Below, in pieces: positions 10,939-37,335 of a DNA stretch of 64,000 nt (position 1 is the stretch's first letter; each line of letters opens with the position of its first letter). The DNA lies in the NCBI GenBank assembly GCA_904063045.1, contig CAJFCJ010000001.1, positions 2,542,001-2,606,000 of the forward strand, given 5' to 3'. The notes under the pieces are model-generated. The model was given only the letters and a program-made list of their open reading frames with translations, made no database searches and was not told the origin of the DNA. The DNA comes from Dimorphilus gyrociliatus. Taxonomy: Eukaryota; Animalia; Annelida. The position numbers and the translations under genes were made by a program.

Positions 10939-12455
10939 CTATAGAAGTAAGTCTATTTCATGCAATACCAAATTGGAACTGGAAAAGATTCTAGCATCGA
11001 GTATTGTTCTCGCTGAAGGTCTTTCACTTTCCGTAATACTAGTCATATGGATGAGATTTGTAGAGATTTCTGAATCGGAAGGTAGTTTTTCCTGCGATTC
11101 TTGTTCATTAGTTTGTAGATTAAATAACTGCAAACCAATTACTCCTAAACCATAAATGTCACTTGAAAAGCTATAATTATTTAGCTTGGCTTCTGGAGCT
11201 CTGTAAATACTATTAACAAGATTCTTATCTTTCTCTTCGGCTTCTATGCCCATATCAAAATTTCCCATTTTCACGAGTAAGTCGTTCGAATTGTTCATAA
11301 CAAATATATTGCTCGGTTGGACGTCTTTATGCATAATCTTTTTATCATGAAGATAATCCAAAGCTGATAAGAGCATAAGCATAATTCTCTTTTCAAATTC
11401 AAAATATTCAAAATTAGATGAAGGGATACGAGATTCAATCCAATCGGATAAGGTTCCTGTACAATATTCCATTTGAATATACATATTTAAAGTGGAAAGA
11501 TGATTTAATCTCTCTAATCTCCCCTTTTCTTCATTAGACGAAAACCAATTAACTCCATCAGCTCTTTTCTCAATTTCAAACCATTTATCATAATATTTAA
11601 CGAGATTTTGATGTTTACACTGAATCAACTGATTGATTTTCTTCTATTAAAATTAATAACATCTGTTGTTGTTTTTTGAAAAAACAAAAATATCTACTAA
11701 TCTCTTACCTGACGAATACTAATTTCGTTGAATTCTTTAAAGATAATCCTTTCAAGTTTTATATTATAAACAGTATTACTTGACTTTTCCTTAGCCTATT
11801 TCAACAAGAACGTATACATCATTTTGAAAAGGTAAAACATTTAAAAGATAAATACTTTAAAACTAGTTTTGTATTGCCTTTCAACTTGAAAGTTTAACTT
11901 GAAGAAATCTTGTTGAATAGGAATATCTGCAGTATATTCTGTTAATGCTATTCCGTAGATTCTCTCCACAATATCCTTTGAAAGTTTTATCTTATCAACT
12001 GCTTTATCCGATATATTAATTTTTGGGTGATCATCTATTAAAAAATGACTTGAATTACCTTTGTTTTTTTAAATAAAATAATGATTTTAATAAGTAAAAA
12101 AATTACTATCTAATCTATAAAATTCAATATTTGCAATATCTGTCAAAGCTTTTGCCGCTGCATCTCCTTTTGCAGTTATCTCATCAATACCGTATCCCTG
12201 CATTGGTGATATTTTAATATAAAAATATCAAAAAAATTGATATATATATGATATAGTTACAATATATTTTTTATTGAAAATTGTTAATGTAACTGTTCCG
12301 CCCGAACTGCTTTTTGGACGCTGTTCAAATTTACCATAAATAACATTTTTATCAATTTCATTCAATATTAACGATGGATGAATTTTATTGGCAAAATTTT
12401 CATTTATATCCAAATTACAGTTTGGTAGACCTGTTTTTACGTTTTCTAGTGACAT
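10939..12455 (-). CDS. K1: dsRBM + eIF2-alpha-kinase-like pseudokinase
   Basis: Exon 1 HPSLILNEIDKNVIYG...VTLTIFNKKYI spliced to GYGIDEITAKGDAAAKAL (degenerate dsRBM). Kinase exon 10939-11628 has HQNLVKYYDKWFE, MYIQMEYC, HKDVQPSN, and GNFDMG in place of DFG. No GxGxxG loop in the spliced N-lobe exons. Confidence 0.8.
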
Positions 12456-18382: not shown

Positions 18383-21300
18383 TCAGAACACGATCTTATT
18401 TTCTGCCTCATTAAGAGTAGCTCTTGAAATCTTAAGGCGAAACTCGCGAAACTCCGATACCATATAATGATTAATACTCTTTTTCTCGAAGGGATATGAT
18501 GAATGCCTGCGATGCACCGACACCATACAATGATCAATACACTTTTTCTCGAAGGAATCTAATAGAGACTTCCCTATGCTTTTTAAATCTGTCAAGTCCT
18601 GAAATTTGTCCAAAGATGACATGTAAGGTAGAATAGAAATTTGTCCAATCTTAGCTATCTGTCTGAAGTCGTTTGTAGAAATAAAAATATTAGTTGTTCT
18701 AATATTTCCATGAACTTTAAAGTGCTTGTAGACGTAGTTCAAACCAGAAACTATATCGTCAAAGAGTTCACGCTCTATATCCTCATTTTTTTTGTCCTCT
18801 AGCCAGTTCTCTAAATTTAAACAAATATATTCCATTTGAACGTATATTTGTAATATTGGCTCTTTTGTTCTAGGACTGCTCTCTAGCCATATTTGGAAAT
18901 ATCTCAGCACATTTGAATGTTTAAATTGAAGTAGACTATAAACGTTTTTTATTGTCTGAAAGGAAAAGTGTTGCATTAACATTTTATTAGATTAAATTTA
19001 TATTCTTCATACTTGCAAATAATTACGTTTACTAATGTCTACAAATTTAATTTTCTTAGCGTCTACAATAAAAATCCCTTTGTCCAGATTCTTTTGAACC
19101 TAAAATAGAAGAAAATGAAATTTGAAAACTTAAAAAAGTTCATTTTAAAGAAAATTCAAACCTTTGCAACTAATCTAGTTTTACTTTGATGTACAATTGC
19201 GCTAATTGTGAAACTACCTTTAAAAAAATTTTTTTTAAAAGGCTTGATCTGTTCACTTACAACAAGTTGATTAATCAATGCTTGTTTTTTTTTATCAAGT
19301 TTTGAATTATCAAAGACGGAATCCCAAGGAAATCCTTCCGCCAGACATTCTGAAAAACAATCATTTTTTTTTGACTTAAGACTAAGATTTTTAATTTGTT
19401 AAAGCAATAATTTGTAATATCTTACTCTGAAAATTTCTATAAGAAAACTCATAAAGATTTTGAAGGAGTTCACTAGCAAAGATTCTCTTTTCTTTTCGAG
19501 TCTTTCCCACGACCTATATGTCAATGATTTGTTATATATTTACATTGAGATATTTAAAAGCAACCTTAATTATGTAGATTGGACCGTTAATAGTTACCTC
19601 CTGATATGCGTTTCTATGATTCTTTGAAAATTTTAAAGACTTGGAGCAGACTGAAAGAATACTGCATGGATGAACACTTTTCCTATTGAACGAATACGGC
19701 AATTCTGATTTAGTATTTATACTATCTTCTTCGATTGTTTTAAGGTTTAATGATGGAGATTTCTTAACAAGCTGATGAGGAGGAATGCGTCTCATCTTAG
19801 AATCAGGTAAAGTCATAATTTTGACGTAATAAGAAAATAAAGTGAATTCATCAGGCTGGAGATCATTGCTATGTAGTAATAAACCATTATTAGTATTGTT
19901 TAATCTTTCTATAAAATCCTGAAGAGTTTTACACTTGCTAAGCATTAGTTGAAATACTCTTCCAAGGCTATAAATATCAGATGGATAAGAATATGTTGAC
20001 CCTTTTGCCTCTGGCGCTCGGAATATTAGTGTTCCAATATTAGATGTAAATTTAGTATCTTCAGTTTGAACATCGTGAATTAATCTTGATAGTCCAAAAT
20101 CGCCTACCTTAGCCATGAACTTGTTATTCTCTTTTATCACCAAAATATTTGAAGGTTTGATGTCTCTGTGTAATACCTCCTGCGAATGCATATATTCAAG
20201 AGCGGATAATAAGTTGTGCATCATATCTATTTCTGTAGAAAAGTCATAAATGGTCCCAATTTTACGAATGCTAAACAACCAATGTTCTAGATTCGCCAAA
20301 CATAGTTCGGTTTGAATATAAGCGTACAGGCGGGGAAGACGACTCAACCTTTTGTTCATTTCGATTTCTTTCAATGATTTACTCGAATTGACACTTGACG
20401 AGTAGAATGATAGACAATTCTTATCTTGTTCTTCAATTTCAACCCACGACGTGTAATATCTAACAATATTAGGATGATGAAGTTTAGCTAGCACAGACAT
20501 TTCTCTGAAAGACTAATAATTGATCCATATTATAAATTTCCTTACAAATTCACTTAAAATACCGTTTTTAGTACTGTAGAATCTAATGTCTGAAGTGCTA
20601 TTTCCTGCTTTTTTATAGCAAAATATTGACGGTTATTCTTGCTGGCCTAAAATAAATAATTTAATAAATAATTATAAAGATTCTATTAAAAAGATTAACT
20701 TTATAAACAACTCCAAATCCTCCTTTTCCAAGAATTTCTTTTTCTATATTTCTCTTTTTAGTATAGTCAAAATCTATTGTATGAGAGTGTGTTTGTTTCA
20801 TATCGTTTTTAATTAATTGTTTTAAGAAGTAAGTGTACAACTTCGCTTTACATTTCCATTCAACCACTATATTATCAACATTTTGGCTATTCAAAAAAAA
20901 CCAAAACTTCTTCTTACCTAAATGAAACAAAGTAAGAATTTATAATTGGTTGTAATAATAAAGTGTTACTTTTTCTTCTTAGAAGAATGCTAAAACATTT
21001 TTCCAAAGCTTTTACAGCTGCTTTCAATTTTCTTTTTTTCTTACTGGCCGTCTAGAGGTTGAAATTTACAAATTTATTTCTATTAATGCATAATAATTCA
21101 ATAATTTGTTGCCTTTATGAATGTGCCATCGATGAGTAATTCGTAATCAGATAATTCCATATTATACATTATTTTTTCGTTGAATAATTCCTTATTACAT
21201 GATCTTATGATTGTAATCATTTCTAGAGGTGATACCACAATTTTCAAGTCGCCGTCACCCTGTGGCCGTAAGTCAACATAGCCATGATTTACGTCTTGTC

Positions 21301-22473: not shown

Positions 22474-24328
22474 ATGGCTTCTGCAAGTTCACAGAATTAT
22501 ACGTCACTTTTAAACGAACTTTTTCCGGGTCAAATCCAGGTGAAATTTCTTTTTCTCTTGTATTCTATTGAATATTATAGTCTTTTTTTTATTTTACAGT
22601 ATACGGAAGTTAAAAGTGGTCCAGACCACGATCCTACATATAAAATTTCGCTAAAGTTACGAGGAAAATCGTTTCAAGGAATTGCAACAAATAAAAAAAC
22701 AGCTAGAAAGTTATGTGCTGAACAAGCTTATAATCACTTTAAAAGCAATAGTATTAACGAAGAGAGAAGGGATTATCAATTATCTGAAGATGTCCTAAAT
22801 CCATCAGTAATTCTAAATAAAGTTACTAAAGGTACTAGATACAGTTTAGTCGAACAAAATGGTAATAATTCTACAGTGGACGTTTCAGTAGAGGGAGCTG
22901 TGTATCGGGTATTAATTAAAGCATAATTCAAATAATGCTTTAAAGCCGTTATTTAATATATAAATTAAAATTTTAAAGGGTACAGGTAGCGACGAAGCAA
23001 TGGCTAGAGCAGATGCAGCAGCTCGAGCTCTGACAACTCGATTTCAAATTGAATTTGATAGGGAAAATAATAGTATTATTTGACGGAACACATTTTAAAA
23101 ACTATTTTAATATATTTTCTTTATTTAAAATGTAGATCAAATCCCTAAAATTGCCTTAGCAAGTATAAAAAAACTATCTGGTAAAGTAGCCCCAAAAGTA
23201 CTTGAAGAAATTTACCAGAAAAGTTTAGAAGAGTACAATAAAGATATTTCTATCGATACTGGACATTTCAAGAGACATTTTTTTGATGAAACAGAACTTG
23301 GTTCGGGATCTTTTGGATCTGTTTCAAAGGTTTTAAATAATTTTCATCGTTAAAGGTGTATAACATATGTTTCATTATTTCTTTAAAGGTAAAAAGTCGT
23401 ACAGATTCACAATTCTACGCAGTCAAGAGGGTTACTTTGCTACCTTTGAAAAAAGAAGAAATTATGAAGGTATCACATTTGTTTCTTGCTTTATACTTTC
23501 CTCATTCACTTCCCTTTTTAGACGTCAAGAGAAGTTATCCACCTATCCGTCTTGAATCATTCAAACATTATTAGATACAATCGAGCTTGGTTTGAAATTG
23601 GATACATACCAACAGGTCCAGATCATATACCCTGTTTGCACCTGTATATTCAAACAGAATTATGCAATCATGATTTATCATATTGGATCAAAAACAGAAA
23701 AAATCATCCTGAAATTATTAACAATAACACTGATGAAGTGAAAATCATGCACGATGTTTTGTCAGCATTGAGTTATCTTTGTAAACAAAAAGTTATTCAT
23801 CGAGATATCAAACCTCAAAATATATTTATTATCGAAAGGTCAGATTCGAATGAACTAGTTGTAAAATTGGGCGATTTTGGTTTATCTAGAGTTAAAGATT
23901 CGATGGCGAAGCTCACTGGTGGTATTGGAACGCCTTTTTACTTTGCTCCAGAGGTATTAACTGGCGACTACAGCTACCCAAGTGATATTTTTAGCTTTGG
24001 TTTAGTAACTCTCGAATTATTTGGACTTCACAAAAGCTCTGACGAATTACGATTAGATGTTGGTGCACTTAGAAATGAAAATACACCGCCAGCTCAACTT
24101 AACCATAAATATCCCCAAATATACGACATCGTTAAGAAAATGACAAAAACCTCACCAACAGAAAGACCCACTGCAGACGAATTACTTAACATGGGTCTTT
24201 TTGAAAACTATTCATCGAGGAGTTATCAAGATTTGGTAAAAGAAAATGAGCAATTAAAGGCTACTGTATTTCAACAGAATAAAAGAATAGAAGAGTTACA
24301 GATGATAATCGATTCTCTTCGTACTTGA
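22474..24328 (+). CDS. K3: 2x dsRBM + eIF2-alpha-type kinase + C-terminal coiled coil (PKR-like architecture)
   Basis: dsRBM1 SLLNELFPGQIQ|YTEVKSGPDHDPTY...GIATNKKTARKLCAEQAY; dsRBM2 NPSVILNKVTKGTRY...AVYR|GTGSDEAMARADAAARAL; GSGSFG, YAVK, HSNIIRYNRAWFE, LYIQTELC, HRDIKPQN, DFG, GTPFYFAPE; heptad tail LVKENEQLKATVFQQNKRIEELQMII. Canonical GT-AG introns of about 55-70 bp. Confidence 0.9.
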
Positions 24329-24947
24329 TATTGAAGAATACAGCTAGACATCTCCTCTGGAATGATATTGCCTAAACTCTCTTCGATCTTTTAATACTGT
24401 TATTTAGTGCATTAATACATAATAAACTAATAAACAGTTTTACTTGAAAACACCATAAAATCTTTACTTTTCATTTATTGGATATTTAATATTCACAAAA
24501 TCTTTACAATCGTCATTTTTATGAATATTAATATGGTAGTATGTATGTATATTTTATACATATACGATGACATTACTCGCTATTTAAACTGGAGAACAAG
24601 ATCACTTTAGGGCAGGTAGTTGATTCACTAGCTGATATGAGTAATAAGTTATATCTAAAGCCAAATATTTAGAATTCGAAAGTAACTTGGCAAAAACCAG
24701 AAATCTATATAAAGTACGACTAGAGCAACCTAAAGGAGGTCTCTTACTATACTATTTATATGAGCAGACGAACTTAGTTGCTATTTTGACTCATTCAGAA
24801 GAGTTCTTAATTTAAAACACCATTAATTAACTTAAATCTTAAAGGTAAGAATTATGATTTATTTGATGGTACATTCTTACTTACGATCGTCGTTTAATGT
24901 CAAGGATATTTTTTAAACTATGACTTTCAATTTCAGTATTTACATTC

Positions 24948-26567
24948 ATGGAGCCTGAGAATATAGATTATATCTCACTTTTAAACAGGAAATTCGGCAA
25001 ACACGTTAAAGTATGTAAAAAATAATCATAACAAAGTAATTCTATATTCATCAATGTAAATAGTACGTGGATGTTGAAAGCGACGACGATGGTAAACCTA
25101 TATCCGATTTTACAAAGAAAATTCTCATCCCGACTAAAAAAGGTGAAATATCATTCACGGCAATCGGTCGAAGTAAAAAGATAGCTAAGCAAGCTGTTGC
25201 GAAAAAGGCATATCACTCACTTTTTGAAACAAATTTCTTTTCTGAATCTAAAAAAGAAAGATGTCAAGTATATATTCAAGTTTAATAAAATATTTAAATA
25301 GATATAAGAACATTATTTCTTCTTATCTAGGATAAAAAGGAGGAGAAAATTGAAGAAGAAGAAGAAAAAGAAGAAGAAGAAGAAGAAAAGGATAATAGGA
25401 AACAAACGTCTTTTTCGGAGAAGCTAGATTATCAACTAAACTCTCCTATCTTAGACAATTATTATGAAAAAGTGTTCTCCGAAGAAAAGTTTATAGGTGA
25501 AGGAGGATTTGGCGAAGTTAAAAAGGTTGGTATCCTTAATAAATTATTAAAAAGAGTTCTATATTAATTATTATAGGCAAAACACAAAATAAACGAGCAA
25601 TGGTACGCAATAAAAGAAATAAAAGTGACGGATAGCAGCCCTGAAAGTATAGATAAGGTAATTCTCATTAAAAAATTCATATATTTTTAAAAGCTTAATA
25701 TATGTTTCTAATGAATAGAATAGAAGAGAAATATTATTATTATCAAACTGCTCACATCCAAATATTGTAAGATATTACGGTAGTTGGTACGAAACTCGTC
25801 AACACGAAACTTCATCATTCCCAAGTAATAGTAGTAACAATTTTAGTATATTTATACAAATGGAGTTATGTGATGGTAATTTGGAAGACTGGATATATGA
25901 TAAATCAACAAAATTGCTTTGTTTTAAGAGAAAAGTTATTCACGATATGTTATCAGCCGTCCATTATATTCATTCTTTAGAGATTATTCATAGAGATATA
26001 AAACCATGCAATATTTTAACTAATAAACAAAATGAGACAATTGAAGTGAAACTAGGGGACTTTGGTGTAGCAAGAACGATTGGGAAAAGGCACACAAGTA
26101 ATGTTGGTACACTGGGCTACACTGCTCCTGAAATAGATACTTGTGACTACGCTACTTCCGTTGATATATATAGCTTAGGGATTGTTGCTCTAGAGGTGTT
26201 TGGAAACTTCAAAACCAAAGCAGAGTTCTATCACTGTGGTAACTTGTTTAAGAAAACAGGAGAATTTCCGTCAATGTTATTAGAAAACCAAGTAATATGT
26301 GAAACTATCAAGAAAATGACTGATTCAAAAAATAGGCCAACAGCAGAGGAACTCCTAAATTCTGATGTATTTTCTGAAAGCAGGAATGACGATGTCGTGA
26401 GATTAATAAATAAAATCCAACTACAAGATCAAATAATACAAGATTTACGGCAATTAGCATCAGATAAAGATAAAAGATTAGAAGAATCAAAGAAATTGTT
26501 AGATATACAAAAACAACAAATTGAAGAAATGGAGAAATTATTTCAAATTAAACATTCTAATAAATGA
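24948..26567 (+). CDS. K4: 1x dsRBM + poly-Glu linker + eIF2-alpha-type kinase + C-terminal coiled coil
   Basis: MEPENIDYISLLNRKFGKHVK|YVD...AIGRSKKIAKQAVAKKAY; EEEEEKEEEEEEK; GEGGFG, YAIK, HPNIVRYYGSWYE, FIQMELC, HRDIKPCN, DFG, HTSNVGTLGYTAPE; long heptad tail. Confidence 0.9.
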
Positions 26568-26998
26568 CCTATTTATAGATAATTAATTAATATGTTAATT
26601 AATAAATATAAATTTTTTTATTTTGGATAATGAATTACATTATAGGATTAATTTAAGAATTTAAGTTTGTTTGACTCTTTAATAACAATTAGTCGTCTAA
26701 TATAAACATTCAATTATAAAATATTCAATAATATTTCGTTTTGCAAAAAGCTTCTAAATGAATATTTATCTTTTTGATAATAATAATATTATAGGCCTAA
26801 TATATCCTTATCAACCGCATTCATTTATTCCAGAATTTGCCTCCATCAAAATGATTAGTTATGAATCTACCGTGAATATTGAGAGTATGAATTATCTTAC
26901 TTTTATGAACACATCATTCAATTCATTTTTATTTTATTGTCTCTTTTTTCAATTGAAGAATAAAATAGCACAAAGTTAATTATTAAGAATAAGATGAA

Positions 26999-28970
26999 CT
27001 ACTTTTGAAAAGGGTTTTCCAAGATATTTGAAGCTTTTAATCGATATTTGGCTAATTCAAATTTCAGGTTGTGAATTTCCTCATTTTTCAATTCGATCGT
27101 TTTGTTTAACTGTCGAATTTCTTCATAACATTGCGACAGCGTAAATTGGTTGGCTGATTCAACGTCTTCAAATAGAAATCTACTGTTAAGTAATGTAGCA
27201 GCAGTAGGTCTTCGACTTGGATCGCTATCTGTCATCTCTTTAATTGTGTCAGATAAATATAGAGATTTAGACGTTAAATCATACGGTAAATTTCTATTCT
27301 TTGTTAAATCTCTGACGGCTTCGGCGAACTTTTCAGTTGAATCAGCAATATCTGAAAATAACTCCAACGTGACTATACCAAGGCTATATATATCGCTTGA
27401 AAAATTGTAGCTAAAAGAGTAAATTTCGGGAGCAGCGTAAAAGATGGTTCCAACTCCACCGGTTAGATTTGCAGCGGAAGAGCAAGGATTATTCACTTCC
27501 CTTGCCAAACCAAAATCACTTAATTTAATCACCATGTTACCTAGTTCATCAGCAATTAAGATGTTAGAAGGTTTAATGTCTCTATGAATAACACGTTCAT
27601 TATGAAGATAGTTTAGAGCCTTCAATATATCTCTTAACATAATCTTCTCCATCGAATAAGAGTAACTGTTTGTAACTTTTCTTCTTGACAGCCATTTCTG
27701 TAGATTTTCTACACACAACTCGGTTTGCAAATACATATTGAGACAAGGAATGTCATCAACAGTTGAATATTCTATAGCATTTGAAGTTGGATTTTCAATT
27801 TCAAACCAAGATGTATAATATCTAACAATATTTCGATGTTGATATCTAGCCAATTCAATTATTTCTCTACTTTTCTGTTAAAGTTAATACTTACTGTTTT
27901 TAATTGTTTAGAATAATTAAAAAAAAAAAGTCTACTTTACCTTCTTTAGTTTATTTTCCATTAATTCAGAAAATCGAATTTTTACCTTTTTTACGGCGTA
28001 GACTGTTCGTTCAAGTTTGTTTTCAACCTAATTTAGTAACTTGAATATATATTTAACAAGAATTGATGAAAGAGTAAGCATTACCTCATAAACTTCTCCG
28101 TAGCATCCTGAACCTATTGATTTATTTATATTAAACTCCTTTTTAAATCTTAGTTCTCTAGCATTTAAATCCTTTGTATACTCTTTGACAATGAACTTGA
28201 ATACTTGAAGTTTTTCTTTTGGAGGCAATGTTACTTCATCCAGAGCATTGCCAGATAAAACTACCTTTGGTTGGCCATCTTTTTGTTCAAGAATCAACAA
28301 TTAAATGATTTTTCATAAATTTTCAATTTGGCAATAGATAAAACCTGTTTGATATTGGAATCTAAAATTCCATAGAGTTTCCATAGTCTCAACAATTGCT
28401 CGAATTTTGGCTACTTGTTGTTTTGGGCCGAATCCCTATGAAACAATATATACTGTATTTGTAAACATTGACAGTGAATAAAAAGGAGAAAAGTCTTTCT
28501 CTCACCTCAAAAATTTGATCGTCGATACTAAGAGTAACTCTAACATTCTCATCAATATTTAATCGACCAATACCTGTCTCGTAAGCAATATTTTTATTAA
28601 TTTCATTTAATATTGAAGGGAGAGGAATTGAGATGCTAGATTCTTCATATCTTTGAAAAATATCAGGCCTCCGATTGTAATCTGCTAAAGCCATAGCTGC
28701 GCACAATTTTTGAGCATCTCTTTTGTTTTTTCCCTTCGCCTCGTATGATATACGATTTATAGTAACTTTACAAGTATATATTGGCGAATGATCCGGCCCA
28801 TCTCGATCAATAAATTCAAACTATTAAAGCTTTTATTAATTAACTTTTCCAGAAAACATCAACAATCAACAAACCTGTCTACAATGTGGAAAAGTGTCGT
28901 TGAATTTAGACATAGTATCGGGAGTAATTACCACATCGGATTCATTTGTGTCTGTTGATGACATCATCAT
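26999..28970 (-). CDS. K5: 2x dsRBM + eIF2-alpha-type kinase + C-terminal coiled coil
   Basis: PHCRQ|FEFIDRDGPDHSPIYTCKV...GKNKKDAQKLCAAMAL; PSILNEINKNIAY...QIFE|GFGPKQQVAKIRAI; GSGCYG, YAVKK, HRNIVRYYTSWFE, YLQTELC, HRDIKPSN, DFG, GTIFYAAPE; heptad tail IRQLNKTIELKNEEIHNLKFEL. Confidence 0.9.
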
Positions 28971-29059
28971 GTAAGAGCACAATTAAGTATTAAAATGTTT
29001 TATTTCTCTAGATCAACTCGTATCTTTCTTTCTCCGAGAAATATGAAAACTGGTATTTT

Positions 29060-29072
29060 GGTTTCGGTTTCG
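29060..29072. promoter_or_regulatory. Candidate IRF/ISRE-like element (GGTTTCGGTTTCG = CGAAACCGAAACC) in the K5/TKFC bidirectional promoter
   Basis: Exact TTTC-NN-TTTC double core, located between divergent ATGs at 28970 and 29163. Motif match only. Confidence 0.4.
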
Positions 29073-29162
29073 AAGATGTACACACGAAATCTATTCACAG
29101 CAGGACAGTGCATTCAATTTGAAACGATTTTGATTTAATCAAGTTGAACATTTAATTGTAAA

Positions 29163-31190
29163 ATGAATGATAAAAAATTATACAATAATCCAGCAGAAAT
29201 TGTTGACGATGCTCTCGAGGGTTTAGCTAAATCTAATAAAGGGATTAAAGTGGTGAAATCCCACCGAGTTGTCGTTAGATCAGATGTTAATCAAGTAATT
29301 CAAAAGGGTTTAGTAACTTTGGTTAGTGGAGGAGGTGTGTACAAGTGTAAATTTATAAAGAATCATTACGAAATTTGCATAAAATAACAAATTACCAACT
29401 ATTAAAAATACTTTCAAAATCATGTTACTAATTAAGGTTCAGGACACGAGCCAGCACACGCCAATTACGTTGGTGAAGGCATGTTAACAGCTGCTGTTTG
29501 CGGGTCAGTATTCGCGTCACCCCCGCCTTCGAATATAGAATGTGCACTGAGATTTGCAAAATCTCCTGCCGGCTGCTTAGTTATAGTAAAGAATTACACA
29601 GGAGATAGAATCAATTTTGGTTTAGCAGTCGAAAAATTAAAAAATGAAGGTTTTAAATTAAAAATGATTGTTGTTGGTAAGCAAAAAAAACTTGGTCATT
29701 TATTTAACTTATTAATTATATCAAGTACAATTTCAAAGGTGAAGATTGCGCAAATCACTCTGCATCAATGACAGCAACCGGTAGAAGAGGTTTAGCTGGT
29801 GTTGTCTTTGTTCATAAAATTGCAGGTGCTATGGCATCAAGAGGTTGTACTTTGGAGGAGATTGTTGATCATTTAAAAATCGTCTGCTCATCTCTCGGTA
29901 CTGTTGGTGTAAGCTTCTCTGCTATAAGTTTGCCAGGAAGTGATAAACTACTCTTCAACCTGGATAACGACGTTTATTCGCTAGGTTTAGGCATACACGG
30001 AGAGATGGGTGCTTTTAAGGAGAAAATGTCATCGGCAAGAAATATAGTAGCCACTATGTTTGATCACATGACTGGAGAAAAGAATCCAGTAAGAATTGAC
30101 ATAAATAATTCTCGATTAGCAGTCTTAATCAATAATCTAGGAGGATTATCAAATCTTGAATTAACTTTATTCGCAAACGAAGTACTGGAATACTTTCGCA
30201 ATTATCCTGAAATTCAAATTGAAAGAATATATATTGGAACTTTTATGACTTCTCTAAATATGAATGGAGCATCTATAACAGTTTTAAAAATAACTACAAA
30301 TTCACAATTAACAGATTTAGATTCAAAAACAACGGCTAACGGCTGGAAAAATCAGGATTCTTTTGGTATAAACAACGATTTTGAATTAAATTACAAAGAA
30401 GAAGAGAAAGAATATACAAAAGAAGATAGTACAATTTCAAAGAAAATGGAAAATGCATTAAAGTAACTCTATAGTCTTAAACATTTAAAAACTTAATTAA
30501 TAATCTAATGAAGCTCTATACTTTTCAACAATTGCTTATTAAAATCGATTGGTGAAGAGAACATCAATCCTATAGAGTTACTTTACTAAAAGGGAAGCCT
30601 TACAACATGTAATTGACGAGTTAATAGAGAATGAAGAATACTTGAATCTATTAGACTCAATTGTTGGTGATGGAGATTGCGGATCTACCTTTAAGAGAGT
30701 ACTTTTAATATTAAAAGAAAAATTAAACATGAATAAGCTACGAACAGATTCACCATTCGCTCTTCTTATGCAACTATCTGAATTAGCTCAGAAAGATATG
30801 GGTGGTACTTCGGGTGGGTTGTATAGTGTTTTTTTCGCAGCAGCTGCTTCTAAAATTAATAAAGAATGCTCCATTACAACTATTGGAGAATCTTTACGAG
30901 CTGGAGTAGAAGCCATTCAATATTATGGAGGAGCTAAACAAGGGGACAGAACTATGTTGGACGCTCTTTTACCTTGTTTAGAATGCTTTAAGAGTGAAGT
31001 TTCGTCTAAAGAAATTTCTAAATTAATCAAGGAGAAAGTAGAAGAAGGTGTAAATGAGACAACTCATTTAAAAGCAAGAGCGGGTAGAGCAGCATACACT
31101 GATACTGTTCATCACAACAAACCAGATGCTGGCGCCTATGCTGTTGGCTTATGGATGAAATCTTTATGCAACAAATTACTTATTGAATAA
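29163..31190 (+). CDS. TKFC: Triokinase/FMN cyclase (dihydroxyacetone kinase, DAK1+DAK2)
   Basis: KKLYNNPAEIVDDALEG, LVSGGG|SGHEPAH, MLTAAVCGSVFASPP, VKNYTGDRINFGLAVE, GRRGLAG, LGLGIHGE, INNLGGLS, DSIVGDGDCG, MGGTSGGLY, GDRTMLDAL, ARAGRAAY, PDAGA. Confidence 0.97.
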
Positions 31191-31495
31191 AATGCATTCC
31201 TACTATCAGCGATTATATCCTTCGTACGTTGATAATAACTCATATTATAAGTAAAGGTTGATTGATAAAATTTGTCAGTGAAAATTTAAAGACAGATTAA
31301 ATGTTTGGAACATAATAAAAAATGGATTGACTTTACTAGTTTTCTTATATTCGAATTCTATATCAATGAAATTTATTGATAATTCAATCGAACGTACCTG
31401 GATGTTATACATTCTATATTTTCGTTATAGTTTATATCCACTAGAGGGCCATACATATACGTTGTCATTCGTCAGTGTTAACTGGTAAATATAAG

Positions 31496-33875
31496 ATGTT
31501 CAAATTGAATAATATCACTAAATTTGTCATTAAAACTCAACGTTTACAACTAAGTAGAAGTTTAACTACTTCATTATTCACAGAGGAACACAATCAACTT
31601 CGTGAAAGTTTGAGAAAAGTGAGTTTATCCAAAATTCATCGTGTTCTATATTTTGAACTAAATAAAATCTATCTTTTTTTCAAAAAGCTTGATATTATAC
31701 AGTAATCCAATTGTCCAAAAATTAATATGCAGGGTTGGATCAATAACATTCAGGTCATTTGTGCCAATATCCCCAAAAAAACAATAGTACATATATATAA
31801 TTTTAAACTGATACACTGTATATTACTTACTCTCTCACCAATTTAATTATAAAATTTGAATTAGATTGTTGAATGTCAAGCATGACTACACTCTGTAAAA
31901 TGCATCAGACAGAAGCTTAAAGTTGGTGAACACATAAAGTAGTAATGGTCTTTAAATGGATCAAATACTTTAAAAGTGGATTGGACAGGCACGTCAGGAA
32001 TAGGAATTTCAGTTTTTGACAAGACGGTACTATTTCAGGCTGAAGAGGAGAAGATAATGCTAAATAGGACTATATCTTGAAGTGAAATTTCAGTCACATA
32101 CTTGTGTAGGAGATGGATCATATATTTCTTTAGGATAGGAAAGGAATGATACTTTAAGAATGTAAGGATAAGAGATAATAACGTAAACAGTTAGAAGTAT
32201 TTTCGAACTTGCTAGTTGTGGATGAAAAGAAGAGACATATTATATAATATGATAGGGCAGGCCCCATAAAGCAGAATATATCAAGGAAAACTTTTCAAAG
32301 CTAAAATTTAAGCTTTTGCCTCACTCAGCTTGTAATCCTGATTTTATCCTAAGTAACTTTCACCTCCTAAACCCGCTAAAGGGGAACATGATGGAAATTG
32401 GTGTTTTAAAACATGACAATACTACGAGTTTTACATAAAACTGGTTAAAACATCAATGAAAAAAGCACTTTATACTTTGAGAGGCATTGCAGACTTTGGC
32501 AAATTCTGCAATTTGTGTATTAAAAGGGGAGAAAATTACTTTGTAAACTGATCCAAATTTGATAAACATAAATATGCAGGTTTTCCATAAGCTAAAACTT
32601 ATTAATACCCTTATGTATTTATAATTAAACACAGAAATTGTATATCCTCGCCCTTGCTATTTTGACCTTGACATAATTACACTTAAAGCTTAATACAATT
32701 AATTAATTTTACAGATCATAGACAAGGATATAAACCCATATGTTGACGAATGGGAAAAAGCGAAAATATTCCCTGCAAAGAAAGTCTTTAAAAAATTGGG
32801 CGATGCTGGTCTGTTAGGAGTGACAAAGTCCCCTGAATATGGAGGCCTTGGACTTGATTTTTCTTTTGCTGCAGCAGTAGCGGAAGAACTTGGAAATATC
32901 AACTGTGGTGCAATTCCAATGGCGATTGGAGTTCAGAGCGATATGGCAACGCCAGCTCTAAATACATTCGGAAGCGACTACTTAAAGAGAAATTTCCTTG
33001 CACCTAGTATAGCAGGTGATATGGTAGCATGTCTAGGTGTTAGCGAACCAACAGCTGGATCGGACGTCGCTGCTATAAAAACAAGGGCGGAAAGAAAAGG
33101 AGACGATTTTATTATTAATGGGTCTAAAATGTGGATTACCAATGCATTCCAAGCAGATTGGATCTGTTTATTAGCAAACACAGGAAGTAGCTCAAAGGTT
33201 TGAGATAAACGACTTACTCTTACTCCTCTATATTCATTATTTTCCCTCCCTTAGTTGCATCAAAACAAAAGTTTAATCGTTGTTCCTATGGATACCCCTG
33301 GAATTGAACTTATTCAAAAAATTGACAAAATTGGTATGCATTCATCCGACACTGCTCAAATAAACTTCGAAAATGTCCGAGTTCCAGCCAGTCACGTAAT
33401 AGGCGAAGAAGGTAGTGGCTTTATGTATCAGATGGTACAATTCCAACAAGAAAGACTATACGGAGCACTCGCCTGTTTACGTCCGTTAGAAAAGACTATT
33501 GAAGAAACTCGAGAGTATTGTCGCATGAGGAAAATCTTTGGCAAAAGTCTTCTCGACATGCAAACTGTTCACTTTCGATTAGCCGAATTGGAAACAGAGA
33601 TTGAAGCCCTACGAGCTCTTTGCTATACAGCTACCGAGAAATACTTATATAATGAAGATGTTACAAAATTAGCGTCCATGTGTAAGTTAAAAGCTGGTCG
33701 TTTGGCCAGAGAATGCACCGATTCTTGCCTACAATACTGGGGTGGAATGGGCTATACAAGTGACGTTCTTATTAGCCGGTTCTACAGAGATTTTAGACTT
33801 ATCTCTATTGGAGGTGGAGCTGACGAGGTAATGCTTTCGATTATATGCAAATACAATAATAGTTTACCAAAATAA
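31496..33875 (+). CDS. Mitochondrial acyl-CoA dehydrogenase, LCAD-like (invertebrate 'acdh-6'-type)
   Basis: Targeting-peptide-like exon 1 (MFKLNNITKF...FTEEHNQLRESLRK), 1.1 kb intron, then PEYGGLG, AIGVQSDM, CLGVSEPTAGSDVA, INGSKMWITN, KIGMHSSDTA, FQQERL, LQYWGGMGY, IGGGADEVM (Glu in helix G, LCAD-type). Confidence 0.93.
31725..32617 (+). mobile_element. Decayed mariner relic in intron 1 of the ACAD gene
   Basis: Fragments VFKWIKYFKSG (HTH), GRPHKA (DNARPHxA), KLLPHSACNPDFILSNFHLL (LPHPPYSPDLAPSDFHL) and RGIADFGKFCNLCIKRGENYFVN* (C-terminus). Weak ITR-like ends near 31725 (gcagggttggatcaataa) and 32598-32617 (cttattaatacccttatgta). Confidence 0.6.
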
Positions 33876-34253
33876 TGAAAGGTACACATATTTTTCTTAA
33901 TAATTTTATAATTCTAAAAACGATTTCTCTGATTACAAATTGACTTAAATAAATATAATAAAAAAATAAATATAATATTAGTGAAAAGTAAACTCTTCAT
34001 TAAATAAAATTTACAAAACAAAATAATGTATTTAAAATATATTTTAGTTGTAACCGTACGCAGAAAAAGAATTTCTGGCGTTATATGAATTGTAAGCATT
34101 GTACGAATCGTACTCTTTCTTTTCTGGGACCCAATTGAATGATGCGTATGACTTCTCACCCTTGTCATTCGAAAAACCTAATCCATGCCTCTGAAAGAAA
34201 AATTTAGATTGCCAGAAATTTTATAGTTGCAGATTCCGTTGTTTAAATATATT

Positions 34254-37200
34254 TCATTCGAACCCGGCCTTTAAAGCAGACATTAACCGTTCAGTTGGAT
34301 TATCATTATTTTCCGTTTCTAAATGAATGGCCATATTTGCTCGTATCATATTCTTTGGTAGTTCCATGCCTATTTTCATCATTGCTATTTCGCTGGCAAC
34401 ATTTTTTGCTTCTTTTCGACTTTTTCCCCTTCCAATAAATTCTCCCGAGCATAAAAATAAAACTACTTCGTGAACTTTAGAGGTAATCGAGGTTTTGAAT
34501 TGAAAATCCAATTCGTTTCGAAATTTTTCATTCAAAATTCCCGTAGCATTCTGCGGTTGGGCTACGGTGCCTTTTGCTGCCCTTTTAAGTTTCAGTTTTT
34601 GATTAAGTCGCTTGTAATAACCGGGTTCGTTTGAAATCTGAAAAAGAGCAAGTGAAAGCAGAACCTACCTTTAACTTTTTATATTTATATAGATATACTC
34701 ATTAGTTGTCAAAAAAAAGCTTACAATCAGTTTGATTAACTCTTTTTAATGAAAACTTAAGAGTAATACTTGTTTCGTCATTCTCATTTCTGACATTAAT
34801 TCAGAAAGAAAGGGCAGATAATTACCTTTTGGTCATTATAGCGAAAGGATTTCTTCCAAATCAGTAAAAAAAAAGAATGACGAAACAGAAAATTGTTTCC
34901 ACTACACGTTTTTTAGTAATTTTGGCTGATTTCACTCGCGAAAATAAAAAAAAGGGGGATATTGAAGAAAGTCTACTTACACTTTTTGTGTTACATTTAG
35001 AAATCATTTTCTTTCTGGCCTTTTCTTTCCTCATTTTCCTATCTTCTCGAACTTTATGCGCTCTTCTAAACCACTCTCCACTTTGTTTAAGAGATTCTAT
35101 AGTGCATTGTAGAGCTTTCTTTTTTGCTTCTGGCTTAGTAGCTCCAGCTCCCTCGTATTTTTTCCCTTCAACAGTAACTACACATACAGTAGCTTTTCCA
35201 CAATTTTTGCCAGAACCAGATACTGATTGATATATTATATCGATAGGATGTCCGTAGGCAGGACCAAAATGCTCATAGAGAATTTGAACTTCATTCTTAC
35301 TCTCACCTAATACAGTTGAAACAGGAGTAAAATTTCCAGTTTGTAAAGTTTCACTCTGACTGTTTCGGACTATTGGTTGTCGAATACGTTTTATAATTTC
35401 AGGAGCTAGCTTCACTTCTTCGAAAGCTTCATCAGTAACAATCAACTCTGGGCAAGACATTTCATCTGTTTAAAAAAATACGGTCAAGGATTTAGCAAGG
35501 AATTTAATAAAGTTAAAAAACAGTTCCTTTGAATTTTCTAAAGTAATTCTTTTTAAAATACAACGTTCTTGAGGGGAAAAAAACACATTAAGGAATCACA
35601 AGAATAATCATTAACATAACTTCTAATAATAGAAACATAAATTAATCACGAAAGCACTCACATTTTGGATAATAAATAAATACAACTGACTGTTATCAAC
35701 GCGAAGAAAGATAAATCATTCTTAATTTACTAGTAATAAACAAAATTTTCGGTGTTTCCTTTCGGTACGAGAAGGGATCACATGCAGATTCTATCAAAAT
35801 AATGTGTCAAGTCCTTTGAATATCTTTTTTATGCCATATAAAATCAATGAAAAAAGGTGACTTATTAAATTTCTTTTAGTAATCGCATTATTATTTAAAA
35901 AAACTCATTACACGTTCTTATTTTACTACTTAATATTAAAGAGTTTCCAATTAGATCATAGTTTCAAAAGCATAAAAATTCTATAAAATCAATAGTCCTA
36001 ATTAGATTATTTATTGCATTAAATCAAACTTTAAAGTAAGAGAGCGAAGAACGAGTTATTCTGAATAGTTTTGATAGATCCTTTTGGAAACGTAATAATA
36101 AGAAAGAAATAAAAATAGACAGAATAATTTCCTTTTCTTTATATATATAGTATTGACTAGCCTATTGATGTAATTTATGCTCCTTTCAAGGATGAAAACT
36201 TAAAATTTTAACGTTTTTACATTATGCTTAAATAAACCAAAAGATAATTCTATAATTATTACAAGCTGATTTAGATTGTTTTTTTTTAATTAACAAAAAA
36301 AGTTACCTGCTGGTTGATTAAATTTTAAATTCCATATACTAGTTAGAGCATTTTGAGCTGCCCTTGCCTTTGCCAATTTTTTATTTCTTCCAACACCCTT
36401 TGGAAGAGTTTTCATATAGTTTTACACTGAAAATATGTAAAATATATAAAAATTACCTCATAAACGGTTCCATCTACAACAACTGTGACTTTAAAAGTTC
36501 TATTCGGTGGGAGTCCAATCTCGACAGCTTGGCTATACTCTAGATCCTTACGTATTTCATTAAGAATTGAGGCTGGATTCTTCACCTCTGTAGTTTTATT
36601 TGGTAATAGTAAGTCTGCAGAATTGAACTGTTTCGAAGATTCTGGTATTGGAACATTAATGCCTCCGCTATTAGATTCAGAGGAGCTTGTATTTGTTGTT
36701 GGAGCAGTCGATGATGATGTTAATGTTACAACAGGCGACGCTAAAGGGCTTCCATACTGGTTTTGCGTTGACTGATTATCGAAGCGTCTTATATTTATAC
36801 CTTGCTTTGATAATTCTACAAGGGTGTTTAAAGCATTTTGAGCGCATTGCATTTTCGCTGCTTTTTTATTATGTCCAACTCCCTCGTACGTCTTTCCATC
36901 AATGGTAACTTGCATTGTAAAAATTGGTGCGTGGATCGGTCCTGTTTGACTAGCAATGATATACTGTCAGGGAAAAGAAATATAATTATCTTAAATTTTC
37001 TATCATTGATTGAATTTGCTAACCTGTAGACCATGACGAATTTCATTAAGTTGTTGAATTGGGCTTTTATTAGGATTAATAGTCAAAACTGAAGATCCAC
37101 CAGTCGCTCCTACTTTCTTCTTCTTATTACCAGTGATATTAGGGCATGTTGAAGCGGGTCTTTTAAAGGACTGTTGAAATGGTTGAGGTGCAGTTGAGGA

Positions 37201-37335
37201 GAAATTTTGGCTACTATCGAAGCGATTATAACTAGGAGGTTGTAGATTTTCTTCATTAAAAGCAGCAACCGGAACGTCGTCTGGAGAACAAAAAGAAGCA
37301 TTATTGTTTAAGTAATGGACAACCGATCGTGCCAT
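34254..37335 (-). CDS. ADAR2-like dsRNA-binding protein with four dsRBMs and no deaminase domain
   Basis: Phase-consistent splicing: SPIQQLNEIRHGLQ|YIIASQTGPIHAPIFTMQVTIDGKTYEGVGHNKKAAKMQCAQNAL; KNPASILNEIRKDLEY...VDGTVYE|GVGRNKKLAKARAAQNAL..IWNL; dsRBM3 (EGAGATKPEAKKKAL); dsRBM4 (GRGKSRKEAKNVASE); stop at 34254. No HAE/PCG deaminase motifs before the convergent ACAD gene. Confidence 0.85.

What the first reader, a model, noticed from the sequence alone, without database searches (positions are those of the whole stretch)
22474..37335. Kinase dsRBMs share intron positions with the nearby ADAR2-like dsRBM gene, suggesting a local domain-shuffling origin
Seen directly: a phase-0 intron just before the first beta-1 aromatic of dsRBM1 occurs in the dsRBM gene (GLQ|YII, 37023), K3 (QIQ|YTE, 22540), K4 (HVK|YVD, 25011) and K5 (CRQ|FEF). 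A phase-0 intron just before the GxG of dsRBM2 occurs in the dsRBM gene (VYE|GVG), K3 (VYR|GTG, 22909), K5 (IFE|GFG), K1 (KYI|GYG) and at the equivalent place in K2. All also share the short ADAR2/ILF3-type helix-1 spacing (ILNEIRKDLEY vs ILNEINKNIAY, ILNEIDKNVIY, ILNKVTKGTRY). Inference: the sensor module was copied from this ADAR2-like gene or its ancestor onto a kinase, which would make it PKR-like by convergence.
Basis: partly seen in the sequence, partly recalled or inferred. Interest (0 to 1): 0.8.

Follow-up and report, generated by a model that had tools for sequence, protein, structure and literature searches.

The report
Kinase RNA sensors copied from ADAR2
In this small worm genome, a cluster of stress-kinase genes took its double-stranded-RNA-binding front end from a relative of the RNA-editing enzyme ADAR2 that lies about 8 kb away, as three shared intron positions show, so the genes resemble the vertebrate antiviral kinase PKR by convergence and not by descent.

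Summary
Transcript contigs show the two K3 junctions and the K4 junction spliced.

- Intron A lies before the beta-1 aromatic of dsRBM1. Intron B lies before GxG of dsRBM2. In this genome both occur only in the three ADAR2-like genes (the true ADAR on contig C5, a two-dsRBM gene on C7, and the neighbour D) and in the kinases.
- A and B are absent from ADAR2 orthologues of an annelid, a nemertean, a fish, an isopod and a beetle.
- They are also absent from fish PKR and fish ADAR1. Those two share a different intron, phase 2 after GPxHxx.
- A third intron, E, is phase 1 and lies four codons after the dsRBM2 tail motif. The kinases share it with D, C5, C7 and with annelid and nemertean ADAR2. It marks the likely shuffling joint.
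- In a dsRBM tree the five kinase dsRBM2s form a clade that is sister to D's dsRBM2. Uniting them with PKR is rejected (AU p = 0.0025). dsRBM1 is unresolved by sequence alone.

Other notes of this scan already describe the kinase array. This report settles where its sensor module came from. dsRNA sensing itself is untested.

The parts
22474..22539 (+). K3 exon 1: start codon and helix alpha-1 of dsRBM1, ending QIQ
22540..22599 (+). K3 intron A: phase 0, 60 nt, in frame and stop-free, yet spliced
   Evidence: transcript-contig joint
22600..22908 (+). K3 exon 2: dsRBM1 beta1-alpha2, linker, dsRBM2 alpha1-beta3
22909..22978 (+). K3 intron B: phase 0, before GTG
22979..23072 (+). K3 exon 3: GxG, alpha-2 and the tail FQIEF of dsRBM2
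23073..23135 (+). K3 intron E: phase 1, five codons after the tail motif
23522..24325 (+). K3 main kinase exon
   Evidence: Pfam Pkinase 8e-35
24948..25010 (+). K4 first coding exon: alpha-1 of its single dsRBM
25011..25063 (+). K4 intron A: phase 0
25064..25268 (+). K4 exon: rest of the degenerate dsRBM1
28875..28970 (-). K5 exon 1: alpha-1 of dsRBM1, ending CRQ. The exact start Met was not settled.
28821..28874 (-). K5 intron A: phase 0
28506..28820 (-). K5 exon 2: dsRBM1 beta1-alpha2, linker, dsRBM2 alpha1-beta3
28436..28505 (-). K5 intron B: phase 0, before GFG
28345..28435 (-). K5 exon 3: GxG, alpha-2 and the tail WNFRF
28279..28344 (-). K5 intron E: phase 1, four codons after the tail motif
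27002..27877 (-). K5 main kinase exon; nearest solved kinases are GCN2, PERK and HRI, then PKR
12198..12260 (-). K1 intron B: phase 0, KYI|GYG. K1 has only a dsRBM2-type domain.
12107..12197 (-). K1 exon with GxG, alpha-2 and the tail ANIEF. A GT follows at the phase-1 E position (12106).
21052..21112 (-). K2 intron at the B-equivalent place, FIK|TAS, with a GC donor. The domain is degenerate.
37024..37335 (-). D (ADAR2-like, no deaminase) exon 1: N-terminus and alpha-1 of dsRBM1
36964..37023 (-). D intron A: phase 0
36457..36963 (-). D exon 2: dsRBM1 beta1-alpha2, linker, dsRBM2 alpha1-beta3. E = 9e-24 to the rat ADAR2 dsRBM1-2 fragment.
36398..36456 (-). D intron B: phase 0
36307..36397 (-). 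D exon 3: GxG, alpha-2 and the tail WNLKF of dsRBM2
35466..36306 (-). D putative intron E: phase 1, four codons after the tail, the same place as in Owenia and Tubulanus ADAR2. The 841-nt span to the exon with dsRBM3 is inferred and not checked with RNA.
34257..35465 (-). D downstream exons with two divergent dsRBM-like domains (R3, R4). Linkage to exons 1-3 is not verified.

Best explanation
The N-terminal dsRNA-binding module of the kinase array was taken as a unit from an ADAR2-type gene of this worm's own lineage. The array comprises K1-K5 in the window and two more kinases just upstream. The transfer was by exon shuffling.

The module is made of three exons: alpha-1 of dsRBM1; the rest of dsRBM1 plus most of dsRBM2; and the end of dsRBM2.

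Proposed order of events:
1. An ADAR2 paralogue gained two introns, A and B, inside its dsRBM pair.
2. It kept the old spiralian ADAR2 phase-1 intron E, which lies right after dsRBM2.
3. A copy of its 5' exons was joined through intron E to an eIF2alpha-kinase-family gene, most likely by local duplication next to the ancestor of gene D.
4. Tandem duplication then produced the array. Some copies lost dsRBM1 (K1 and the two upstream kinases). K4 lost dsRBM2.

The products are built like PKR (dsRBMs plus an eIF2alpha-type kinase) but are not PKR orthologues.

Inferred, not shown: dsRNA bound by the better-kept domains (K3 and K5 dsRBM1, and the dsRBM of one upstream kinase, keep GPxH and KKxAK-like motifs) would bring kinase domains together, trigger autophosphorylation, and lead to phosphorylation of eIF2alpha.
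For: Shown:
- Introns A, B and E sit at the same codon and phase in the kinases and in D, C5 ADAR and C7. RNA contigs confirm them for K3, K4 and K5.
- A and B are absent from every other dsRBM gene of this genome. They are absent from ADAR2 of Owenia, Tubulanus, a fish and an isopod, and from fish PKR and ADAR1, which share a phase-2 intron after GPxHxx.
- E is at the identical place in Owenia and Tubulanus ADAR2: four codons after FNVEF or FNMEF, phase 1.
- Position-specific similarity: kinase dsRBM1 scores best with ADAR2-type dsRBM1, and kinase dsRBM2 with ADAR2-type dsRBM2. D's dsRBM2 is the top hit for K5 (37 bits) and for one upstream kinase (40 bits), with the next hits near 25.
- Tree: the five kinase dsRBM2s form a clade (95/81). 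It is sister to D dsRBM2 (93/84), inside this genome's ADAR2-like dsRBM2s (89/71).
- AU tests reject kinase dsRBM2 + PKR (p = 0.0025) and all kinase dsRBMs + PKR (p = 0.005).
- Shared characters: the short alpha1-beta1 spacing and the tail W/F-N-x-x-F after dsRBM2.
- Solved-structure ranking: ADAR2 4e-6 and 5e-7, against PKR 0.1-0.8.
- D lies 8.4 kb from K5. All cluster kinases lie within about 36 kb on contig C1.
- Among the 150 best representatives out of 1.84 billion proteins, the only dsRBM-kinases that are not of the vertebrate PKR family are this genome's own.
Against: - dsRBM1 is unresolved. Holding kinase dsRBM1 with ADAR2-type dsRBM1 (p = 0.28) or with PKR (p = 0.31) is equally acceptable.
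- K4 dsRBM1 sits with PKR dsRBD1 (95/88), but on a branch of length 2.66.
- Helix 1 of K3 and K4 reads NY-T/I-SLLN, which recalls the PKR pattern NYI-x-x-LN.
- Many vertebrate PKRs rank high in the profile search, although their scores are summed over several domains.
- Only five ADAR2 orthologues were mapped for introns, and none is a close relative of this worm. A and B could therefore be older than assumed.
- The alternative that the kinases join C5 and C7 rather than D is not formally rejected (p = 0.073).
- A further family member on the unplaced contig C157 seems to have its single dsRBM in one open frame, without A or B.
- D's transcript structure was not checked with RNA.
- No functional data exist.
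Confidence: 0.72

Rival explanations
1. The module does come from an ADAR2-type gene of this lineage, but not from the neighbour D or its direct ancestor. The donor was another paralogue (C5-like or lost), and D's closeness to the array is coincidence.
For: C5 ADAR and C7 carry the same introns A, B and E. The AU test does not reject kinase dsRBM2 grouping with C5 and C7 to the exclusion of D (p = 0.073). K3 dsRBM1 scores about equally with c7, D and C5 (34, 34 and 32 bits).
Against: The best tree puts D dsRBM2 as sister to the kinases (93/84). D dsRBM2 is the clear best hit of two kinase dsRBM2s. C5 and C7 share a third intron in alpha-2 of dsRBM1 that D and the kinases lack. By my estimate, the chance that one of three ADAR2-like genes falls within 10 kb of a 36-kb cluster in a 78-Mb genome is about 0.002.
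Confidence: 0.15
2. The direction is reversed. D arose from the 5' part of a dsRBM-kinase gene that lost its kinase, so D is a derivative and not the donor lineage.
For: D and the kinase modules are sister lineages, and a tree does not give direction. D has no deaminase and carries odd extra domains R3 and R4.
Against: D's dsRBM1-2 is very close to ADAR2 (9e-24 to rat ADAR2) and sits on short branches (0.37 and 0.18). The kinase domains sit on branches of 0.6-2.7. A copy taken from a fast-evolving kinase gene would have to have stopped diverging.
Confidence: 0.06
3. The kinases are true orthologues of vertebrate PKR, an old bilaterian gene kept in this worm. The likeness to ADAR2 reflects the general relatedness of dsRBMs.
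For: The architecture is the same. Vertebrate PKRs are among the best profile hits. K4 dsRBM1 groups with PKR dsRBD1. PKR + kinase dsRBM1 is not rejected (p = 0.31).
Against: All PKR dsRBDs mapped have the phase-2 intron after GPxHxx, which ADAR1 shares and the worm kinases lack. The PKR-type long helix-1 spacing is absent. Kinase dsRBM2 + PKR is rejected (p = 0.0025). Introns E, A and B are ADAR2-lineage characters. The K5 kinase domain scores higher with GCN2, PERK and HRI than with PKR.
Confidence: 0.04
4. The shared intron positions are parallel gains at favoured insertion sites, or errors in the gene models, and say nothing about ancestry.
For: Several junctions have AG|G-like exon ends, which are proto-splice sites. 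K2 needs a GC donor.
Against: Three positions match in codon and phase across up to nine kinase domains and three ADAR2-like genes. No other dsRBM gene of the genome has them. Five junctions are confirmed by transcript contigs. Sequence, spacing and tail motif point the same way independently.
Confidence: 0.03

Closest known systems
PKR (EIF2AK2) of vertebrates
   Same: N-terminal tandem dsRBMs followed by an eIF2alpha-kinase-family catalytic domain. Genes occur as tandem arrays and vary in dsRBM number, as in fish and amphibian PKR (PMC2291453).
   Different: The dsRBM introns are at other places: A and B in phase 0, against phase 2 after GPxHxx in PKR. The helix-1 spacing is short. dsRBM2 is rejected as PKR kin. 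The kinase domain is no closer to PKR than to GCN2, PERK or HRI. PKR is regarded as vertebrate-specific (my own knowledge).
ADAR2 (ADARB1) dsRBM1-dsRBM2 module
   Same: Short alpha1-beta1 spacing. One-to-one correspondence of dsRBM1 and dsRBM2. The tail F/W-N-x-x-F after dsRBM2. A phase-1 intron four codons after that tail, as in Owenia and Tubulanus ADAR2.
   Different: No deaminase domain follows; a kinase does. Introns A and B are absent from the ADAR2 orthologues examined. The kinase copies are highly diverged, and several have lost the RNA-contact lysines in dsRBM2.
PKZ of cyprinid and salmonid fishes
   Same: A precedent for swapping the nucleic-acid sensor module of an eIF2alpha kinase: Z-alpha domains replace the dsRBDs, probably acquired from another cellular gene (PMC2291453).
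   Different: In PKZ a PKR kinase received a new sensor. Here a non-PKR kinase received ADAR2-type dsRBMs.
Deaminase-less ADAR relatives and dsRBM-only partners of PKR (PACT, TRBP)
   Same: D and the C7 gene are dsRBM-only proteins of ADAR2 type. D sits beside the kinase array.
   Different: No evidence that they regulate the kinases. By sequence they are ADAR2-derived, not of the TRBP/PACT family; the genome has a separate TRBP-like gene on C14.

Membership tests
PKR (EIF2AK2) | dsRBM(s) at the N-terminus plus an eIF2alpha-kinase-type catalytic domain in one protein | tested here: met
   Pfam Pkinase on the main exons and dsrm on the front exons. The annotated K5 product P0001 (551 aa) carries both. 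Transcript contigs join the exons.
PKR (EIF2AK2) | Each dsRBD split by the PKR/ADAR1-type intron (phase 2, after GPxHxx) | tested here: not met
   Fish PKR 4 of 4 and fish ADAR1 3 of 3 domains have it. None of the worm kinase dsRBMs does.
PKR (EIF2AK2) | dsRBDs group with PKR dsRBDs in a phylogeny | tested here: not met
   dsRBM2 + PKR is rejected (AU p = 0.0025) and all kinase dsRBMs + PKR is rejected (p = 0.005). dsRBM1 alone is inconclusive (p = 0.31).
PKR (EIF2AK2) | Kinase domain orthologous to PKR | tested here: inconclusive
   K5 kinase exon against solved structures: GCN2 7.5e-28, PERK 2e-27, HRI 7e-23, PKR 8e-21. No kinase tree was made here.
PKR (EIF2AK2) | Activation by dsRNA and phosphorylation of eIF2alpha Ser51 | not testable with these tools
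   Needs biochemistry or a yeast assay.
ADAR2-type dsRBM pair (as a module, not the ADAR enzyme family) | Short helix-1 to beta-1 spacing | tested here: met
   Alignment: 3-4 residues in the kinases and ADAR2, against 6-7 in PKR, ADAR1, TRBP, Staufen and DGCR8.
ADAR2-type dsRBM pair (as a module, not the ADAR enzyme family) | dsRBM1 and dsRBM2 each most similar to the ADAR2 domain at the same position | tested here: met
   Per-domain phmmer. Tree for dsRBM2. dsRBM1 is supported by best hits only.
ADAR2-type dsRBM pair (as a module, not the ADAR enzyme family) | Phase-1 intron four codons after the dsRBM2 tail motif (spiralian ADAR2) | tested here: met
   Owenia and Tubulanus ADAR2. D, C5, C7, K1, K2, K5 and both upstream kinases have a GT at the same offset; K3 is one codon later. 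K3 and K5 are confirmed by RNA contigs.
ADAR enzyme family | A_deamin catalytic domain | tested here: not met
   A PF02137 search of the whole genome hits C5, C21, C8 and C19 only, and nothing in the window.
Exon shuffling event | The transferred module ends at a pre-existing intron of the donor gene, with phase kept | tested here: met
   The module ends at intron E, phase 1, in both donor-type genes and kinases.

The most novel reading that the evidence does not exclude
This annelid lineage assembled a complete PKR-like dsRNA alarm of its own. ADAR2-derived dsRBMs were shuffled onto an HRI- or GCN2-like eIF2alpha kinase. The fusion then expanded into an array of eight or more genes, including likely decoys with degenerate dsRBMs or dead kinases. 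The deaminase-less ADAR2-like proteins (D beside the array, and the C7 gene) act as dsRNA-binding regulators of it, much as PACT and TRBP do for PKR. That would be a second, independent invention of translation shut-off as antiviral defence in animals, with its evolutionary steps still readable in the introns.
Probability: 0.3. Interest if true: 0.85.

Novelty: new variant of a known kind. Interest (0 to 1): 0.7.

Why it matters
PKR is treated as a vertebrate invention. Here an invertebrate has the same architecture, and the intron record shows how it was built: a dsRBM pair lifted from an ADAR2 paralogue at a conserved phase-1 intron and joined to a different eIF2alpha-type kinase.

- It is a clean, datable case of convergent innate-immune architecture by exon shuffling.
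- It shows that intron positions can separate dsRBM lineages (ADAR2-type against PKR/ADAR1-type) where 70-residue domain trees cannot.
- It makes a testable prediction: dsRNA-triggered eIF2alpha phosphorylation exists in a spiralian.
- It flags the neighbouring deaminase-less ADAR2-like genes as candidate partners.

Tried and rejected
- Literature search for exact dsRBM intron positions in PKR, ADAR1 or ADAR2. [quoted passage not shown] I therefore mapped the introns myself.
- Searches for earlier reports of invertebrate dsRBM-kinases found none. This is not proof of absence.
- Look-ups of Asterias, Lingula and Mizuhopecten ADAR2 loci failed because the products were not on record. The Ylistrum gene was too long to fetch. 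No mollusc, brachiopod or echinoderm ADAR2 was therefore mapped, and ILF3/STRBP introns were not mapped at all.
- Whole-protein threading failed for the fish PKR and the fish ADAR2. Only the dsRBM segments were threaded.
- The Asterias 'editase-like' protein was left out of the tree because its domains are not ADAR2-type. K2 dsRBM2 was left out as too degenerate.
- Only one public run holds the stretch, and it is kept as contigs.
- Rejected: the idea that C7 is an ILF3/STRBP homologue. It has no room for a DZF domain upstream, and its dsRBM2 is ADAR2-like.
- Not sent out: no joined (spliced) protein went to any database or folding tool. Searches used single exons by reference. Joined domain sequences were built and used only inside local scripts.

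Full report
SETTING. The window is AT-rich animal DNA (about 30% GC) with introns of about 60 nt. It is part of a 77.9-Mb assembly in 349 contigs. That size fits the miniature annelid Dimorphilus gyrociliatus (73.8 Mb in PMC7854359). This identification is my inference; the run's organism name is coded.

The window holds five genes with dsRBM front ends and protein-kinase exons, K1 to K5 (Pfam Pkinase). Their kinase domains are nearest to GCN2, PERK, HRI and PKR among solved structures. Gene D lies on the minus strand at 37335-34257. Its first two dsRBMs match the rat ADAR2 dsRBM1-2 fragment at 9e-24. D has no deaminase: a whole-genome PF02137 search hits contigs C5, C21, C8 and C19 only. Two more kinases of the family lie just upstream of the window. 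A further one lies on the unplaced contig C157.

I located each junction from the flanking peptides and read the splice sites.
- Intron A (phase 0, just before the beta-1 aromatic of dsRBM1) is in D, K3, K4 and K5.
- Intron B (phase 0, just before GxG of dsRBM2) is in D, K3, K5, K1 and both upstream kinases. It is at the equivalent place in K2, with a GC donor.
- All others are GT..AG and 53-70 nt long.

The one public run that holds this stretch is kept as contigs. These behave as transcripts: they skip exactly 22540-22599, 22909-22978, 23073-23135, 25011-25063 and 28279-28344, among other introns. This mattered for K3 intron A, which is 60 nt long, in frame and without a stop.

THE POSITIONS ARE NOT GENERIC. 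A PF00035 search of the whole genome, followed by reading the loci, gave these results.
- Staufen (four dsRBDs in one 610-codon frame), a TRBP-like gene, DHX9, Dicer, DGCR8 dsRBD2 and kanadaptin have no intron in the domain.
- Drosha is split after the beta-1 aromatic in phase 2. An ADAR-like gene on C21 is split between beta-1 and beta-2 in phase 2.
- Only three other loci have A and B, and all are ADAR2-type:
  - the true ADAR on C5, with a deaminase (TIK|YAL and TFT|GEA);
  - a two-dsRBM gene on C7 without a deaminase hit (NAQ|FSV and TFQ|GGG);
  - gene D.
- C5 and C7 share one more intron, in alpha-2 of dsRBM1. D and the kinases lack it.

OUTSIDE THIS GENOME. A profile of the K5 and K3 second exons was searched against 1.84 billion representative proteins. 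It returned this genome's own products, then vertebrate PKRs, ADARs and unnamed dsRBM proteins. A word search seeded with the nemertean ADAR2 added named ADAR2 orthologues.

I threaded annotated proteins exactly onto their genomic loci.
- Fish PKR: all four dsRBDs are split after GPxHxx in phase 2.
- Fish ADAR1: all three dsRBMs are split at the same place and phase. This is the junction shared by PKR and ADAR1, and the worm's C21 gene seems to have it too.
- ADAR2 of Owenia (annelid) and Tubulanus (nemertean): both dsRBMs lie in one exon.
- A fish ADAR2: no intron in either dsRBM.
- The isopod ADAR2 gene is intronless.
- Tribolium Adar: only a phase-1 intron inside GxG of its last dsRBM.

So A and B are best read as introns gained in this worm's ADAR2 paralogues. 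Shared derived introns are strong markers of common descent.

A THIRD SHARED INTRON MARKS THE JOINT. The tail of dsRBM2 has the form W/F/Y-N-x-x-F. Exactly 28 nt after its start (four more codons plus one base, phase 1) there is a GT in D, C5, C7, K1, K2, K5 and both upstream kinases. In K3 it lies one codon later. RNA contigs confirm it for K3 and K5. Owenia and Tubulanus ADAR2 have their first post-dsRBM intron at this same codon and phase (FNVEFQSAP|G and FNMEFPAIP|S). The kinase sensor module therefore ends at an old ADAR2 intron. This is what exon shuffling through intron recombination predicts.

SEQUENCE EVIDENCE.
- Against solved structures, the K5 and K3 front exons score best with ADAR2 (4e-6 and 5e-7), ILF3, STRBP and ADAR1. 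PKR is at 0.1-0.8.
- Domain by domain, kinase dsRBM1 hits ADAR2-type first domains and kinase dsRBM2 hits second domains. D dsRBM2 is the clear top hit of K5 and of one upstream kinase.
- A careful maximum-likelihood tree of 64 dsRBMs over 70 columns is mostly unresolved. It does recover the five kinase dsRBM2s as a clade (95/81), sister to D dsRBM2 (93/84), inside this genome's ADAR2-like dsRBM2s.
- AU tests:
  - reject kinase dsRBM2 + PKR (p = 0.0025);
  - reject all kinase dsRBMs + PKR (p = 0.005);
  - do not reject kinase dsRBM1 with ADAR2-type dsRBM1 (p = 0.28);
  - do not reject kinase dsRBM1 with PKR (p = 0.31);
  - disfavour, but do not reject, the kinases joining C5 and C7 without D (p = 0.073).
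- The short helix-1 spacing is confirmed in the alignment.

LOCAL ORIGIN. D starts 8.4 kb from K5, with two unrelated-looking genes between them (read by eye). All family kinases except the C157 copy lie within about 36 kb on C1. By my estimate, the chance that one of three ADAR2-like genes lies this close is about 0.002. Together with the sister position of D dsRBM2 and the lack of the C5/C7 alpha-2 intron, I put the local scenario at about 0.55-0.6. I put the broader claim (ADAR2-type origin within this lineage, not PKR descent) at about 0.85.

LINEAGE RESTRICTION. Every other dsRBM-kinase among the 150 best representatives aligns nearly end to end with named vertebrate PKRs (273-684 bits). 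They align only weakly with the worm kinases (57-124 bits). This suggests, but does not prove, that the fusion is confined to this lineage.

HOW IT LIKELY WORKS (inferred). K3 and K5 dsRBM1, and the dsRBM of one upstream kinase, keep GPxH and K-K-x-A-K-like RNA-contact motifs. dsRBM2 of K3 and K1 has lost the lysines. By analogy with PKR, dsRNA would bind the competent domain, bring two kinase domains together, and trigger autophosphorylation and phosphorylation of eIF2alpha. Copies with degenerate domains may act as regulators. None of this is tested.

Noticed in passing
G000:C7:about 24,500-26,600 (-), locus L028 6548-8590: A second deaminase-less ADAR2-like gene with two well-kept dsRBMs and introns A, B and E, plus the alpha-2 intron shared with the true ADAR on C5. 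Its intron A is 1,093 nt, long for this genome. No A_deamin hit lies nearby.
   Followed up: partly
G000:C21:906,589-907,977 (-), locus L031: An ADAR-like gene (one dsRBM plus a deaminase) whose dsRBM is split between beta-1 and beta-2 in phase 2. This looks like the PKR/ADAR1-type junction seen in fish PKR and ADAR1, so the worm may keep an ADAR1-like lineage as well.
   Followed up: partly
G000:C157:1190-2664 (-), locus L042: A further member of the kinase family (41% identical to K5 in the kinase exon) on a 26-kb unplaced contig. Its single dsRBM-like domain seems to lie in one open frame, without intron A or B.
   Followed up: partly
window 22474-26564 (+): The database protein P0002 (938 aa) seems to fuse K3 and K4 into one product. 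The transcript contigs are separate and differ about tenfold in depth figure, and K4 has its own 5' intron (24843-24934). They are probably two genes.
   Followed up: partly
window 22483-22510 and 24957-24980 (+): Helix alpha-1 of K3 and K4 dsRBM1 reads NY-T/I-SLLN, close to the NYI-x-x-LN of fish PKR dsRBDs. K4 dsRBM1 groups with PKR dsRBD1 on a very long branch. This may be convergence at an RNA-contact helix, or a long-branch artefact.
   Followed up: partly
window 34257-35465 (-): D's downstream dsRBM-like domains R3 and R4 are very divergent (Pfam dsrm 1e-4 and no hit) and have no intron inside. It is unverified whether they belong to the same mRNA as dsRBM1-2, across an 841-nt intron. 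If that intron is not spliced, the frame ends nine codons after exon 3.
   Followed up: no
G000:C7:3,545,600-3,547,100 (+), locus L043: An HRI-like eIF2alpha-kinase paralogue without dsRBMs (35% identical to K5). It is a candidate relative of the recipient kinase.
   Followed up: no
proteins P0003 and P0005 (Oreochromis), P0004 (Protopterus): Fish and lungfish proteins with 5-8 tandem dsRBM-like repeats, some with a kinase domain, annotated as uncharacterised or PAK5-like. They appear to be expanded PKR-related genes.
   Followed up: no
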